Source: Octopus sinensis
Taxonomy: Eukaryota
DNA: 64,000 nt
NCBI RefSeq assembly: GCF_006345805.1
Contig: NC_043019.1
Location: 7,253,360 to 7,317,359 of the forward strand
Reading direction: 5' to 3'
The first letter of the stretch is position 1. The number at the start of each line of letters is the position of its first letter. Below are positions 6,050 to 9,194 of this stretch, one piece after another. The notes beneath the pieces are model-generated. The model did not search any database. It was not told the origin of the DNA and worked only from the letters and a program-made list of their open reading frames with translations. The translations under genes were made by a program, and so were the position numbers.

Positions 6050-6058
<9 letters not shown>

Positions 6059-6588
6059 GAGGGCATTATACATACATGCCAGACGGCATTATACATACAT
6101 GCCAAACGCTAAGAGGGACACTCAGTCATTTCTACCAAAAATATTACTAATCCCACCGAATGCAATTTTTCAAAGTAAGACATTTAAAAATATAGACCTG
6201 TATCACAGTGATTTCATACTTACGTAATCATCAGCAGGCCTGAATGTATTATAAATAAACAACGACCCTGCCCCGCTTAAGCCGATCAGCTAACTGATCA
6301 ACATCAACGAAGCACATGGGTGAGTTTATATATATTACATCCGGGTGAATGGCAAACTTTTACGAATTGCATTTCGGGAGAGGAAAAGTTTTTTCGGAAT
6401 AAAAATTTAGCAATTAAGGACAACTACTTAATAAGGAAAACTTAACAAGAAATTGTCAGGTAGATAGCGTAAAAACCTCATAAGAGAAAAAATTTCGAAA
6501 ATAATTATTTCTTATTGAACATATTAATTTATATATAGAGGGCATTATACATACATGCCAGACGGCATTATACATACATGCCAAACGC
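6050..6588 (-). mobile_element. Inverted ~1.1-unit copy of the 479-bp hammerhead-containing repeat (retrozyme-like)
   Basis: Reverse complement of the units in 6594-9194. Its first ~60 nt recur at its end (GAGGGCATTATACATACATGCC near 6059 and 6538), so it spans more than one monomer. Confidence 0.92.
6194..6241 (-). ncRNA. Type I hammerhead ribozyme (inverted unit)
   Basis: Reverse complement reads AGGCCTG CTGATGA TTACGTAAGTAT GAAA TCACTGTGA TA CAGGTCT, identical to the + strand copies. Confidence 0.83.
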
Positions 6589-6966
6589 ATGTATGGTAGA
6601 AATGACTGAGTGTCCCTCTTAGCGTTTGGCATGTATGTATAATGCCGTCTGGCATGTATGTATAATGCCCTCTATATATAAATTATATGTTCAATAAGAA
6701 TAATTATTTTCGAAATTTTTTCTCTTATGAGGTTTTTACGCTATCTACCTGACAATTTCTTGTTAAGTTTTCCTTATTAAGTAGTTGTCCTTAATTGCTA
6801 AATTTTTATTCCGAAAAAACTTTTCCTCTCCCGAAATGCAATTCGTAAAAGTTTGCCATTCACCCGGATGTAATATATATAAACTCACCCATGTGCTTCG
6901 TTGATGTTGATCAGTTAGCTGATCGGCTTAAGCGGGGCAGGGTCGTTGTTTATTTATAATACATTC

Positions 6967-7014
6967 AGGCCTGCTGATGATTACGTAAGTATGAAATCAC
7001 TGTGATACAGGTCT
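6967..7014 (+). ncRNA. Type I hammerhead ribozyme, copy 1
   Basis: Stem I AGGCCUG(6967-73)/CAGGUCU(7008-14); CUGAUGA core 6974-80; stem II UAC-GUAA-GUA; GAAA 6993-96; stem III A-UCA-cug-UGA-U; NUH triplet AUA, predicted cleavage after 7007. Confidence 0.85.
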
Positions 7015-7443
7015 ATATTTTTAAATGTCTTACTTTGAAAAATTGCATTCGGTGGGATTAGTAATATTTTTGGTGGAAATGACTGAGTGTCCCTCTTAGC
7101 GTTTGGCATGTATGTATAATGCCGTCTGGCATGTATGTATAATGCCCTCTATATATAAATTAATATGTTCAATAAGAAATAATTATTTTCGAAATTTTTT
7201 CTCTTATGAGGTTTTTACGCTATCTACCTGAAATTTCTTGTTAAGTTTTCCTTATTAAGTAGTTGTCCTTAATTGCTAAATTTTTATTCCGAAAAAACTT
7301 TTCCTCTCCCGAAATGCAATTCGTAAAAGTTTGCCATTCACCCGGATGTATATATATAAACTCACCCATGTGCTTCGTTGATGTTGATCAGTTAGCTGAT
7401 CGGCTTAAGCGGGGCAGGGTCGTTGTTTATTTATAATACATTC

Positions 7444-7491
7444 AGGCCTGCTGATGATTACGTAAGTATGAAATCACTGTGATACAGGTCT
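7444..7491 (+). ncRNA. Type I hammerhead ribozyme, copy 2
   Basis: Identical motif; predicted cleavage after 7484. Confidence 0.85.
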
Positions 7492-7919
7492 ATATTTTTA
7501 ATGTCTTACTTTGAAAAATTGCATTCGGTGGGATTAGTAATATTTTTGGTAGAAATGACTGAGTGTCCCTCTTAGCGTTGGCATGTATGTATAATGCCGT
7601 CTGGCATGTATGTATAATGCCCTCTATATATAAATTAATATGTTCAATAAGAAATAATTATTTTCGAAATTTTTTCTCTTATGAGGTTTTTACGCTATCT
7701 ACCTGAAATTTCTTGTTAAGTTTTCCTTATTAAGTAGTTGTCCTTAATTGCTAAATTTTTATTCCGAAAAAACTTTTCCTCTCCCGAAATGCAATTCGTA
7801 AAAGTTTGCCATTCACCCGGATGTAATATATATAAACTCACCCATGTGCTTCGTTGATGTTGATCAGTTAGCTGATCGGCTTAAGCGGGGCAGGGTCGTT
7901 GTTTATTTATAATACATTC

Positions 7920-7967
7920 AGGCCTGCTGATGATTACGTAAGTATGAAATCACTGTGATACAGGTCT
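7920..7967 (+). ncRNA. Type I hammerhead ribozyme, copy 3
   Basis: Identical motif; predicted cleavage after 7960. Confidence 0.85.
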
Positions 7968-8398
7968 ATATTTTTAAATGTCTTACTTTGAAAAATTGCA
8001 TTCGGTGGGATTAGTAATATTTTTGGTAGAAATGACTGAGTGTCCCTCTTAGCGTTTGGCATGTATGTATAATGCCATCTGGCATGTATGTATAATGCCC
8101 TCTATATATAAATTAATATGTTCAATAAGAAATAATTATTTTCGAAATTTTTTCTCTTATGAGGTTTTTACGCTATCTACCGGACAATTTCTTGTTAAGT
8201 TTTCCTTATTAAGTAGTTGTCCTTAATTGCTAAATTTTTATTCCGAAAAAACTTTTCCTCTCCCGAAATGCAATTCGTAAAAGTTTGCCATTCACCCGGA
8301 TGTAATATATATAAACTCACCCATGTGCTTCGTTGATGTTGATCAGTTAGCTGATCGGCTTAAGCGGGGCAGGGTCGTTGTTTATTTATAATACATTC

Positions 8399-8446
8399 AG
8401 GCCTGCTGATGATTACGTAAGTATGAAATCACTGTGATACAGGTCT
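8399..8446 (+). ncRNA. Type I hammerhead ribozyme, copy 4
   Basis: Identical motif; predicted cleavage after 8439. Confidence 0.85.
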
Positions 8447-8877
8447 ATATTTTTAAATGTCTTACTTTGAAAAATTGCATTCGGTGGGATTAGTAATATT
8501 TTTGGTAGAAATGACTGAGTGTCCCTCTTAGCGTTTGGCATGTATGTATTATGCCGTCTGGCATGTATGTATAATGCCGTCTATATATTAATTAATATGT
8601 TCAATAAGAAATAATTATTTTCGAAATTTTTTCTCTTATGAGGTTTTTACGCTATCTACCTGACAATCTCTTGTTAAGTTTTCCTTATTAAGTAGTTGTC
8701 CTTTATTGCTAAATTTTTATTCCGAAAAAACTTTTCCTCTCCCGAAATGCAATTCGTAAAAGTTTGCCATTCACCCGGATGTAATATATATAAACTCACC
8801 CATGTGCTTCGTTGATGTTGATCAGTTAGCTGATCGGCTTAAGCGGGGCAGGGTCGTTGTTTATTTATAATACATTC

Positions 8878-8925
8878 AGGCCTGCTGATGATTACGTAAG
8901 TATGAAATCACTGTGATACAGGTCT
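8878..8925 (+). ncRNA. Type I hammerhead ribozyme, copy 5
   Basis: Identical motif; predicted cleavage after 8918. Confidence 0.85.
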
Positions 8926-9189
8926 ATATTTTTAAATGTCTTACTTTGTAAAATTGCATTCGGTGGGATTAGTAATATTTTTGGTAGAAATGACTGAGTG
9001 TCCCTCTTAGCGTTTGGCATGTATGTATAATGCCGTCTGGCATGTATGTATAATGCCCTCTATATATAAATTAATATGTTCAATAAGAAATAATTATTTT
9101 CGAAATTTTTTTCTCTTATGAGGTTTTTACGCTATCTACCTGACAATTTCTTGTTAAGTTTTCCTTATTAAGTAGTTGTCCTTAATTGC

Positions 9190-9194
<5 letters not shown>

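What the first reader, a model, noticed from the sequence alone, without database searches (positions are those of the whole stretch)
6050..9194. Hammerhead-ribozyme tandem array: candidate cephalopod non-LTR retrozyme / circRNA generator
Seen: a non-coding ~479-bp unit repeated 5.4 times (+) and 1.1 times (-). Each of the six complete ribozyme sites has the same 48-nt sequence AGGCCTG-CTGATGA-TTACGTAAGTAT-GAAA-TCACTGTGA-TA-CAGGTCT, which folds as a type I hammerhead with all invariant core bases and an NUH (AUA) site. Established: tandem repeats with one type I HHR per monomer (newt satellite 2, Schistosoma Sm-alpha, Dolichopoda pDo500, metazoan non-LTR retrozymes) are transcribed as multimers and self-cleave to monomers. 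Metazoan retrozyme monomers accumulate as circRNAs and are proposed to be mobilised by Penelope-like RTs. Inference: read-through would yield ~479-nt monomers/circles joined at the AUA/CAGGUC site. I do not recall this family being described in octopus but cannot confirm novelty without a search.
Basis: partly seen in the sequence, partly recalled or inferred. Interest (0 to 1): 0.93.

Follow-up and report, generated by a model that had tools for sequence, protein, structure and literature searches.

The report
Octopus tandem repeat with hammerhead-like ribozyme
A young 479-bp tandem repeat in an octopus genome carries one hammerhead-ribozyme-like motif per unit and looks like a new member of the known animal "retrozyme" class, but the motif has an atypical helix II and nothing here shows that it cleaves or forms RNA circles.

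Summary
There are 5.4 (+) units and 1.1 inverted (-) units of 476-479 bp, with six identical 48-nt motifs. Each motif has the full hammerhead core (CUGAUGA...GAAA, A15.1-U16.1, A17), a 7-bp stem I, and a palindromic helix III.

The weaknesses are:
- Helix II is only 3 bp plus a U·U where nearly all natural hammerheads have G10.1-C11.1.
- No Rfam hammerhead model matches, even at E<=10 on a 91-nt slice.
- The monomer's minimum-energy fold is not the hammerhead.
- No second locus, species or transcript could be retrieved, so covariation and expression are untested.

In favour:
- Two motifs co-fold into a textbook double hammerhead (-28.3 vs -20.6 kcal/mol).
- A motif of this quality is expected about 2e-6 times per repeat unit.
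- The array is non-coding, 34% GC and strongly self-paired.
- It lies head-to-head inside a (TA)n microsatellite, as Penelope-like insertions do.
- Octopus vulgaris has recently active Penelope-like elements.

Mirrored flank modules leave a DNA-level palindrome origin for the inverted copy open.

Verdict: probably a non-LTR retrozyme-type repeat, a new member of a known kind, with ribozyme activity unproven. Moderate interest.

The parts
5794..6057 (.). Left flanking (TA)n microsatellite. It carries two direct copies of a 32-nt interruption module M (5831-5862 and 5942-5973).
   Evidence: TRF; exact module matches.
6050..6589 (-). Inverted arm of 1.12 units. Read 5'->3' on the - strand, it starts 5'-truncated at unit position 92 (6589) and ends at unit position ~142-150 (6058-6050), where the unit's CTCTATATATA merges into the (TA)n.
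   Evidence: blastn; alignment; inverted repeat I1-I3, 99-100% complementary.
6194..6241 (-). Hammerhead-like motif of the inverted arm. Predicted cleavage is between 6201 (A17) and 6200 (C1.1) on the - strand.
   Evidence: Exact 48-nt match; relaxed descriptor hit.
6590..6594 (.). 5-nt filler ATGTA at the head-to-head (5'-5') junction. With the 29 nt of + unit sequence that has no partner in the - arm, it makes a 33-nt non-palindromic centre (6590-6622).
   Evidence: Sequence reading; alignment.
6595..9194 (+). Direct tandem array of 5.4 units of 476-479 bp. It starts 5'-truncated at unit position 63/64 and ends at unit position 274 (GCTAAAT), followed by (AT)n.
   Evidence: TRF; blastn; alignment.
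6967..7014 (+). Hammerhead-like motif 1: stem I AGGCCUG/CAGGUCU, core CUGAUGA, helix II U·U+UAC/GUA with GUAA loop, GAAA, helix III AUCA/UGAU with CUG loop, and A17. Predicted cleavage is after 7007.
7444..7491 (+). Hammerhead-like motif 2 (predicted cleavage after 7484).
7920..7967 (+). Hammerhead-like motif 3 (predicted cleavage after 7960).
8399..8446 (+). Hammerhead-like motif 4 (predicted cleavage after 8439).
8878..8925 (+). Hammerhead-like motif 5 (predicted cleavage after 8918).
7100..7150 (+). 23-bp internal sub-repeat (x2.2; GGCATGTATGTATAATGCC hairpin-forming) that recurs in every unit. Example given for unit 1.
   Evidence: TRF rows with period 23; paired in the MFE fold.
9195..9340 (.). 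Right flanking (TA)n microsatellite. It carries one inverted copy of module M (9252-9283, - strand).
   Evidence: TRF.

Best explanation
The locus is a young, non-coding, hammerhead-bearing tandem repeat of the metazoan non-LTR retrozyme type, that is, a non-autonomous relative of Penelope-like element terminal repeats, sitting in an octopus genome.

Proposed mechanism:
- Shown: each 479-nt unit encodes on its + strand a type I hammerhead with the complete catalytic core.
- Shown by energy calculation: its helix III is too weak as a hairpin, but it is palindromic, so two motifs pair into a double hammerhead.
- Inferred: a read-through multimeric transcript would be cut after the A of AUA|C in each unit into 479-nt monomers with 5'-OH and 2',3'-cyclic phosphate ends.
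- Inferred from other animals: these monomers are circularised by a host tRNA ligase into highly self-paired circles.
- Inferred from geometry: the array arose by target-primed reverse transcription of a multimeric or circular RNA. Priming came from both strands of a nicked (TA)n microsatellite at A/U-rich microhomologies, which gave two arms with 3' ends outward and 5'-truncated ends joined head-to-head.
- Open: whether the U·U variant of helix II still allows useful cleavage rates.
For: - Six identical motifs carry every invariant hammerhead position (C3 U4 G5 A6 N7 G8 A9, G12 A13 A14, A15.1-U16.1, H17=A, C1.1-G2.1) in type I order.
- Chance expectation for a motif of the observed quality is 2.6e-4 per window and 2e-6 per repeat unit. 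The window has no other hit on either strand.
- Helix III (AUCAC-U-GUGAU) is palindromic, one of the non-random hallmarks listed for metazoan and PLE hammerheads (PMC4209133). The hairpin is 0.0 kcal/mol and the self-duplex is -10.1.
- Cofolding two 48-mers gives as MFE a double hammerhead with all core bases unpaired, at -28.3 against 2 x -10.3.
- Helix sizes (I 7 bp, II 4 positions with a 4-nt loop, III short) match the 'canonical metazoan type I' description.
- The unit is non-coding, 34% GC, and folds as a circle with z about -6, as reported for retrozyme circRNAs (PMC7229834).
- The locus meets the operational definition of Li et al. 2026. Unit length and copy number lie within their reported ranges (51-972 bp; 75% of families have at most 7 repeat units).
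- The head-to-head arrangement with an upstream inverted 5'-truncated copy, the partial tandem, and the (TA)n / AT-rich target match PLE insertion signatures (PMC8557442; PMC11167929). The ribozyme strand agrees with the sense strand implied by that geometry.
- Both arms exceed or span more than one unit, so the template was multimeric or circular.
- Only 4.8% of the window is perfect (TA)n, yet both ends abut it.
- O. vulgaris has 31 recently active Penelope-like families (PMC13282606).
Against: - No Rfam hammerhead family (type I, II, III, HH9, HH10) matches at gathering score, at E<=10 on 3.8 kb, or at E<=10 on a 91-nt slice.
- The 10.1/11.1 position is U·U, whereas G10.1-C11.1 is 'highly conserved' and normally changes only by compensation. 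A descriptor that requires a pair there finds nothing.
- Helix II has only 3 Watson-Crick pairs. In the monomer the hammerhead fold is 2 kcal/mol above the MFE, with P about 0.003 in the ensemble, and the 48-mer's folding z-score is only -0.9.
- About 11 such motifs are expected by chance in a 2.7-Gb genome.
- All six copies descend from one recent event, so their identity is not evidence of selection: expected changes in 6 x 48 nt are about 1.5, giving P(0) about 0.2.
- Both RNA polarities fold equally well after composition control (z -6.3 and -5.7).
- No second locus, orthologue, PLE terminal repeat or transcript could be retrieved.
- The mirrored 32-nt modules in the flanks allow a DNA-level origin of the inverted arm.
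Confidence: 0.6

Rival explanations
1. This is an ordinary young tandem repeat (minisatellite or satellite) whose hammerhead-like string is fortuitous or a decayed, catalytically dead relic. On this reading the inverted arm and the array grew by DNA-level processes (fold-back or palindrome formation and unequal exchange at an unstable AT-rich microsatellite), with no RNA intermediate and no circRNA.
For: - No Rfam hit.
- U·U at 10.1/11.1, and the strict descriptor fails.
- The monomer MFE is not the hammerhead.
- About 11 chance motifs are expected per genome.
- Only a single locus is known.
- The mirror symmetry continues into the flanks: an exact 32-nt module is direct x2 on the left and inverted on the right, within 86 nt at 98% complementarity. 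The centre has a 33-nt asymmetric spacer, as in fold-back duplications.
- p1 and p2 share a deletion, which suggests local DNA duplication.
Against: - The chance of such a motif in a given 479-bp unit is about 2e-6 to 4e-5.
- The motif also has the palindromic helix III and double-hammerhead cofold typical of real metazoan HHRs.
- The two outer junctions lie at different unit positions (~145 and 274), so a simple mirror duplication does not reproduce the locus. It would need an extra deletion, array expansion and a flank duplication.
- 5 of 17 other (TA)n arrays in the window are also internally mirrored, so a palindromic target is unremarkable.
Confidence: 0.27
2. The array is not an independent non-autonomous element. 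It is a string of solo terminal repeats (pLTRs) left by an autonomous Penelope-like element whose ORF lies elsewhere or was lost. On this reading the hammerhead is the PLE's own pLTR ribozyme.
For: PLE pLTRs carry hammerheads, and PLE insertions form partial tandems with an inverted 5'-truncated copy in AT-rich or microsatellite targets. In frogs, retrozyme families are sister to PLE pLTRs. Recently active PLEs exist in O. vulgaris.
Against: No RT/GIY-YIG ORF lies in or next to the array. The only RT in the window is a LINE-type remnant 15 kb away (RVT_1 + zf-RVT). Five consecutive complete units without any coding insert are what defines a retrozyme rather than a PLE. Metazoan PLE hammerheads usually have a longer helix II, a shorter helix I, and G10.1-C11.1.
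Confidence: 0.1
3. The conserved string belongs to another small-RNA class, either a C/D-box snoRNA-like (UGAUGA ... CUGA) or a miRNA-like hairpin locus, rather than a ribozyme.
For: There are weak sub-threshold Rfam matches to C/D snoRNA models over the motif (14.3, 9.1 and 8.4 bits against gathering scores of 40-45), and to miRNA hairpin models over the central palindrome and the TA tracts (46-49 bits against gathering scores of 90-100).
Against: All matches are far below gathering scores. The 'miRNA' hits are generic long hairpins made by the head-to-head junction and by (TA)n. No D box lies at the required distance, and no terminal stem fits a snoRNA.
Confidence: 0.02

Closest known systems
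Metazoan non-LTR retrozymes (Cervera & de la Pena 2020, PMC7229834), e.g. the Mytilus galloprovincialis 350-390-bp repeats
   Same: [quoted passage not shown] Both monomer RNAs are predicted to be highly self-paired. The host is a mollusc. Like this motif, the mussel ribozymes lack most of the classical loop1-loop2 contact nucleotides.
   Different: The unit (479 bp) is larger than the 170-400 nt reported there, though it lies within the 51-972 bp of Li et al. 2026. Helix II has U·U instead of G10.1-C11.1. Only one locus is known, and there is no evidence of expression, circles or cleavage. Retrozymes have not been reported in cephalopods in the searchable literature.
Newt satellite 2 / axolotl retrozyme hammerheads (dimeric type I HHRs)
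   Same: Helix III is short and palindromic, so it is unstable as a hairpin but forms an extended helix between two motifs. Cleavage is expected mainly from multimeric transcripts.
   Different: Helix III here has 4 bp plus a 3-nt loop, rather longer than the 1-2 bp described, so some monomeric activity is conceivable. Helix II is non-canonical.
Penelope-like element pseudo-LTR hammerheads and PLE insertion architecture (PMC4209133, PMC8557442, PMC11167929)
   Same: Both show head-to-head upstream inverted 5'-truncated copies, partial tandems, and an AT-rich or (TA)n target. In both, the 3' ends are not fixed to one template position (internal RT initiation).
   Different: There is no RT/GIY-YIG ORF and no recognisable 30-40-bp tail. 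Helix proportions are those of 'canonical' rather than 'minimal' PLE hammerheads. The conserved G10.1-C11.1 is absent.
Hammerhead satellites Sm-alpha (Schistosoma) and pDo500 (Dolichopoda cave crickets)
   Same: Both are tandem repeats of about 330-500 bp with one type I hammerhead per monomer. In pDo500 a double-hammerhead model and non-canonical U-U pairs in a stem are documented.
   Different: Those families are high-copy satellites with population-level conservation and demonstrated cleavage. Here there are 6.5 units at one locus and no functional data.

Membership tests
Hammerhead ribozyme, type I | Invariant core C3 U4 G5 A6 N7 G8 A9 ... G12 A13 A14, A15.1-U16.1 pair, H17 (not G) cleavage nucleotide | tested here: met
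   CUGAUGA ... GAAA ... U-A|C is read directly in all six copies. The descriptor scan hits exactly these six sites.
Hammerhead ribozyme, type I | Three helices around the core with helix I open (type I order: I-5' strand, core, hairpin II, GAAA, hairpin III, H17, I-3' strand) | tested here: met
   Stem I is 7 bp (one G·U), helix II is 3 bp plus a GUAA loop, and helix III is 4 bp plus a CUG loop. The energy of this fold is -8.3 kcal/mol.
Hammerhead ribozyme, type I | G10.1-C11.1 (or at least a Watson-Crick/compensated pair) closing helix II next to the core | tested here: not met
   Positions 10.1/11.1 are U and U. The strict descriptor gives 0 hits. The literature calls this pair highly conserved.
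Hammerhead ribozyme, type I | Recognition by curated covariance models (Rfam Hammerhead_1 and relatives) | tested here: not met
   No hammerhead family is reported at gathering score, at E<=10 on 3.8 kb, or at E<=10 on 91 nt.
Hammerhead ribozyme, type I | Active fold thermodynamically accessible (monomer or dimer) | tested here: inconclusive
   For the monomer, the hammerhead fold is 2 kcal/mol above the MFE with P about 0.003. For the dimer, the MFE is the double hammerhead, at -28.3 against -20.6 kcal/mol.
Hammerhead ribozyme, type I | Covariation/conservation of core and stems across independent copies | not testable with these tools
   All copies stem from one recent event. No other locus was retrievable.
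Hammerhead ribozyme, type I | Site-specific self-cleavage | not testable with these tools
   Requires in vitro transcription of monomer and dimer constructs.
Metazoan non-LTR retrozyme | Tandem repeat of ~50-1000 bp units with a type I HHR in at least two consecutive units | tested here: met
   There are five consecutive + units plus one inverted unit. This is the criterion of Li et al. 2026. It is met only with a descriptor that tolerates the helix II mismatch.
Metazoan non-LTR retrozyme | Non-coding, low GC (<50%), no LTR/PBS/PPT | tested here: met
   The longest ORF is 58 aa. GC is 33.6%. No tRNA-like sequence was found. There are no terminal repeats other than the units themselves.
Metazoan non-LTR retrozyme | HHR MFE below -5 kcal/mol (operational 'active' criterion) | tested here: met
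   The MFE is -10.3 kcal/mol. Criterion.
Metazoan non-LTR retrozyme | Monomer RNA predicted to form a stable, highly self-paired circle | tested here: met
   The circular MFE is -125 to -129 kcal/mol, z -5.6 to -6.3, with 65% of bases paired. The complement is equally structured (z -5.7), so this does not identify the strand.
Metazoan non-LTR retrozyme | Dispersed multi-locus family (evidence of mobility) with TSDs or empty sites | not testable with these tools
   There is only one locus in the 64-kb window. Cephalopod genomes are not in the searchable DNA collections. A TSD cannot be read inside (TA)n.
Metazoan non-LTR retrozyme | Expression as unit-length linear and circular RNA | not testable with these tools
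   No transcriptome access.
Metazoan non-LTR retrozyme | Host genome carries Penelope-like elements | tested here: met
   This rests on the literature only. O. vulgaris has 31 recently active PLE families with 336 insertions (PMC13282606). The window is attributed to Octopus by a 91% RT match. No PLE lies in the window itself.
Penelope-like element insertion | Partial tandem plus adjacent inverted 5'-truncated copy; AT-rich/microsatellite target | tested here: met
   Geometry comes, the flanks, and the definition. One caveat applies: the mirrored flank modules allow a DNA-level alternative.
Penelope-like element insertion | RT + GIY-YIG ORF between the repeats | tested here: not met
   There is no ORF over 58 aa in 6050-9200. 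The window's only RT is LINE-type and lies at 23-27 kb.

The most novel reading that the evidence does not exclude
The locus may be a fresh, nearly unmutated footprint of retrozyme mobilisation. On this reading, a 479-nt circular (or multimeric) hammerhead RNA was copied by rolling-circle reverse transcription. Synthesis was primed from both strands of a nicked, locally palindromic (TA)n microsatellite at A/U microhomologies. That produced a 5.4-unit arm and a 1.1-unit arm joined head-to-head. The RNA would be processed by a natural hammerhead that works without the G10.1-C11.1 pair (U·U instead). This would give the first cephalopod retrozyme, a sequence-level snapshot of the integration mechanism, and a natural exception to a near-invariant ribozyme position.
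Probability: 0.2. Interest if true: 0.65.

Novelty: new member of a known kind. Interest (0 to 1): 0.4.

Why it matters
If confirmed, it would extend ribozyme-bearing circRNA retroelements to cephalopods, whose genomes are repeat-rich and whose latest detailed repeat annotation does not mention ribozymes. At 99% or more identity between units, it would also be an unusually young insertion whose junctions can still be read. Both 3' ends sit at A/T microhomologies in a (TA)n target, and the two 5' ends are joined head-to-head. That bears on the open question of how retrozymes and Penelope-like elements integrate. A cleaving hammerhead with U·U at 10.1/11.1 would also interest ribozyme biochemists, because G10.1 has been implicated in metal binding. 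If the motif is inactive, the locus is just one more young tandem repeat in a microsatellite-rich genome.

Tried and rejected
- Rfam at three sensitivities gave no ribozyme family of any kind, only sub-threshold miRNA and snoRNA hairpin noise from the palindrome and the TA tracts.
- Independent copies through spurious unit ORFs: an exact look-up of 8 ORFs and a homology search with the 42-aa ORF that overlaps the motif both found nothing.
- DNA pattern scans of metagenome contigs (two patterns), GTDB genome contigs and viral contigs gave 0 hits. These collections do not hold cephalopod genomes, so the negatives say nothing about copy number in octopus.
- Conservation among copies: the motif is invariant in all six, but with about 0.5% divergence only about 1.5 changes were expected (P about 0.2). 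Positions 346-479 plus 1-15 are invariant (about 4.8 changes expected), but that window was chosen post hoc.
- Strand asymmetry of folding: the raw energies differ (-129 vs -105 kcal/mol), but the z-scores are equal (-6.3 vs -5.7), so the difference comes from composition. I rejected it as evidence for the + strand.
- tRNA/SINE ancestry: none found.
- A nearby Penelope-like ORF: none found. There is only a frameshifted LINE RT (RVT_1 + zf-RVT) and a weak DDE_3 fragment.
- A simple mirror (fold-back or assembly-artefact) origin of the whole locus: rejected as a single-step explanation, because the two outer junctions lie at different unit positions. It is kept as a multi-step rival.
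Full report
**1. Observation**

Tandem Repeats Finder reports a 479-bp period array at 6594-9194 with 5.4 copies and 98% matches. It is bracketed by (TA)n tracts at 5794-6058 and 9193-9340. 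No match appeared in 100 shuffles. blastn of one unit against the window shows a (-) segment at 6050-6588 (1.12 units) and the (+) array from 6594. There is no further copy anywhere in the 64 kb. The region has no ORF above 58 aa and no tRNA-like sequence.

**2. Is the motif a hammerhead?**

Reading the sequence, each motif has these parts:
- Stem I is AGGCCUG/CAGGUCU, 7 bp with one G·U and a C1.1-G2.1 pair.
- The core is C3 U4 G5 A6 U7 G8 A9.
- Helix II is UUAC-GUAA-GUAU.
- G12 A13 A14 follow.
- Helix III is A15.1 UCA-CUG-UGA U16.1.
- The cleavage nucleotide is A17.

All invariant positions are present and the order is type I.

Several things argue against a canonical ribozyme:
- Positions 10.1/11.1 are U and U, leaving only three Watson-Crick pairs in helix II. 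Cervera & de la Pena (PMC4209133) describe G10.1-C11.1 as highly conserved. In the cave-cricket satellite it changes by compensation (PMC2837043).
- No Rfam hammerhead model reports the site, whether at gathering score, at E<=10 on 3.8 kb, or at E<=10 on a 91-nt slice.
- The hammerhead fold of the 48-mer (-8.3 kcal/mol) is not the MFE (-10.3), its ensemble probability is about 0.003, and the 48-mer is no more stable than shuffles (z -0.9).

Other results argue for a real hammerhead:
- Helix III is palindromic (AUCAC-U-GUGAU). As a hairpin it has no predicted stability (0.0), but as a self-duplex it gives -10.1 kcal/mol.
- Cofolding two 48-mers gives, as the MFE, a double hammerhead in which helices I, II and III are formed and every core base is unpaired. 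Its energy is -28.3 kcal/mol against -20.6 for two monomers. This is the arrangement described for newt, axolotl and PLE-type hammerheads, which cleave as dimers in multimeric transcripts.

**3. Chance**

I wrote an explicit descriptor for the motif. With a required pair at 10.1/11.1 it finds nothing in the window. With one mismatch allowed there, it finds exactly the six sites and nothing else on either strand.

Anchored sampling of 3 million random contexts with the window's composition gave these expectations for a motif of the observed quality (stem I >=7, helix II >=3 behind a mismatch, helix III >=4):
- 2.6e-4 per 64-kb window,
- 2e-6 per 479-bp unit,
- about 11 per 2.7-Gb genome.

The motif alone is therefore not proof at genome scale. 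Finding it inside a tandem repeat unit with the right context is very unlikely to be an accident.

**4. The copies**

Aligning all units gives about 17 differences in about 3150 nt. Nine are substitutions and seven are 1-nt indels, and six of the indels lie in homopolymer runs, so some may be sequencing errors. The inverted arm equals the consensus. Nearly all changes are private to one unit; one deletion is shared by two neighbouring units. The array is thus very young, and the units are not independent witnesses. Zero changes in 6 x 48 nt of motif is unremarkable (about 1.5 expected).

**5. RNA structure of the unit**

As a circle the + RNA folds to -125 to -129 kcal/mol (z about -6) with 65% of bases paired. 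This fits the 'stable and highly self-paired' retrozyme circles described in PMC7229834. The complementary strand has an equal z-score (-5.7), so the raw energy difference comes from composition and does not identify the functional strand.

**6. Anatomy of the insertion**

I number the unit from the base after the predicted cleavage site.
- The (+) array starts at unit position 63/64 (6595) and ends at position 274 (9194, ...GCTAAAT), followed by (AT)n.
- The (-) arm, read on its own strand, starts at position 92 (6589), runs through a full unit, and ends at about position 142-150, where the unit's CTCTATATATA merges into the left (TA)n.
- Five bases (ATGTA) fill the junction.

Both arms are therefore 5'-truncated and joined head-to-head, with their 3' ends outward at A/T microhomologies in a (TA)n tract. 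This is the architecture described for Penelope-like insertions: partial tandems, an adjacent inverted 5'-truncated copy, and microsatellite or AT-rich targets (PMC8557442). It also fits the biochemistry of a Poseidon element, whose endonuclease prefers AT-rich DNA and whose RT initiates internally on the template from either target strand (PMC11167929). The ribozyme lies on the strand that this geometry identifies as sense. An arm longer than one unit requires a multimeric or circular template. Only 4.8% of the window is perfect (TA)n.

**7. A complication**

The flanks carry an exact 32-nt interruption module (TATGCATATATACATATATATATATACGTATA). It occurs twice in direct orientation on the left and once inverted on the right, and nowhere else in the window. 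With the surrounding TA repeats, it forms an inverted repeat of 86 nt at 98% complementarity. The mirror symmetry of the locus therefore reaches about 150 bp into the flanks.

There are two readings:
- The target microsatellite was already locally palindromic and the element landed about 14 nt from its centre. Five of 17 other long (TA)n arrays in the window also have mirrored interruptions, so this would be ordinary here.
- The inverted arm arose by a DNA-level fold-back duplication that included flank sequence.

The second reading needs additional steps, because the outer junctions are at different unit positions (~145 vs 274) and the arms differ by four units. I therefore rank it lower but cannot exclude it. 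The same junction difference also argues against a simple fold-back assembly artefact, although I could not exclude one without long reads.

**8. Context and host**

- A frameshifted LINE-type RT (RVT_1 2e-12, zf-RVT) lies at about 23.3-27.1 kb.
- Its closest named relative is a predicted protein of Octopus vulgaris at 91% identity on a 225-Mb record.
- No Penelope-like ORF is in the window.
- According to a 2026 repeat annotation, O. vulgaris has 31 recently active Penelope-like families with 336 insertions at <=2% divergence. That paper does not mention ribozymes (PMC13282606).

**9. Comparison with what is known**

Non-LTR retrozymes are tandem repeats with one type I hammerhead per unit. 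[quoted passage not shown] This locus meets that preprint's operational definition. It differs in its helix II and in being, so far, a single locus without any expression or cleavage data. Full-text searches for hammerhead ribozyme with octopus, squid or cephalopod found no report of such an element.

**10. Verdict**

The most likely reading (about 0.6) is a young retrozyme-type, PLE-related hammerhead repeat in octopus, which would be a new member of a known kind. Whether its atypical hammerhead is catalytically competent is open; my judgement is that it is roughly even, and that cleavage, if any, is probably dimer-dependent. The main rival (about 0.27) is an ordinary young tandem repeat with a fortuitous or dead hammerhead-like string, shaped by DNA-level palindrome formation in an unstable AT microsatellite. 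Every decisive test lies outside these tools: genome-wide copies and covariation, the orthologous empty site, back-splice reads, and in vitro cleavage.

Noticed in passing
window 5831-5862 (+), 5942-5973 (+), 9252-9283 (-): An exact 32-nt interruption module sits inside the flanking (TA)n tracts, twice direct on the left (111-bp period) and once inverted on the right, and nowhere else in the window. It extends the locus's mirror symmetry into the flanks. With the array removed, the two flanks would form a ~410-bp, locally palindromic AT microsatellite with the insertion about 14 nt off-centre.
   Followed up: partly
window ~23295-27122 (+): A frameshifted LINE-type reverse transcriptase remnant is present (RVT_1 E=2e-12 at 25380-25769; zf-RVT at 26470-26799). 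The closest named relative of the 24735-25220 piece is an Octopus vulgaris hypothetical protein at 91% identity. Many 45-65% relatives sit on long ENA contigs.
   Followed up: partly
window 32318-32764 (+): A weak DDE_3 (Tc1/mariner-type transposase) fragment is present, at E=7e-4 and 19.9 bits, below Pfam's cut-off of 28.6. The ORF is interrupted by a TA-derived (IY)n stretch.
   Followed up: no
window 46671-47066 (+), 53562-53927 (+), 55024-55416 (-), 59132-59539 (-): At least four copies of a dispersed short repeat are visible as shared pseudo-translations (...QIHSQGIGRPGAIAEDTCPRCHAVGLNPEPCGW... / ...NPLTRLWSVRGYSRS...). Each abuts a TA/CA microsatellite. It looks like an abundant SINE-like family.
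   Followed up: no
window, whole: Microsatellite density is extreme: 126 TRF rows, and 4.8% of the window is perfect (TA)>=6. Five of 17 long (TA)n arrays (centres near 38.6, 48.0, 56.9-57.0, 61.17 and 62.76 kb) contain internally mirrored interruption patterns, so AT-palindromic microsatellites are common here.
   Followed up: partly
window 6595-9194, unit positions 346-479 and 1-15: All differences between the six copies fall in unit positions 16-345. The 149-nt block that contains the GC-rich long hairpin and the hammerhead motif is invariant in every copy (about 4.8 changes expected). The window was chosen post hoc, so this is only suggestive.
   Followed up: partly
window 18319-18378 (+): A 27-bp tandem duplication (CAGGTCCCCCAGTTTGCATGGCGAAAC x2.2, 96%) lies in otherwise unique sequence.
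   Followed up: no
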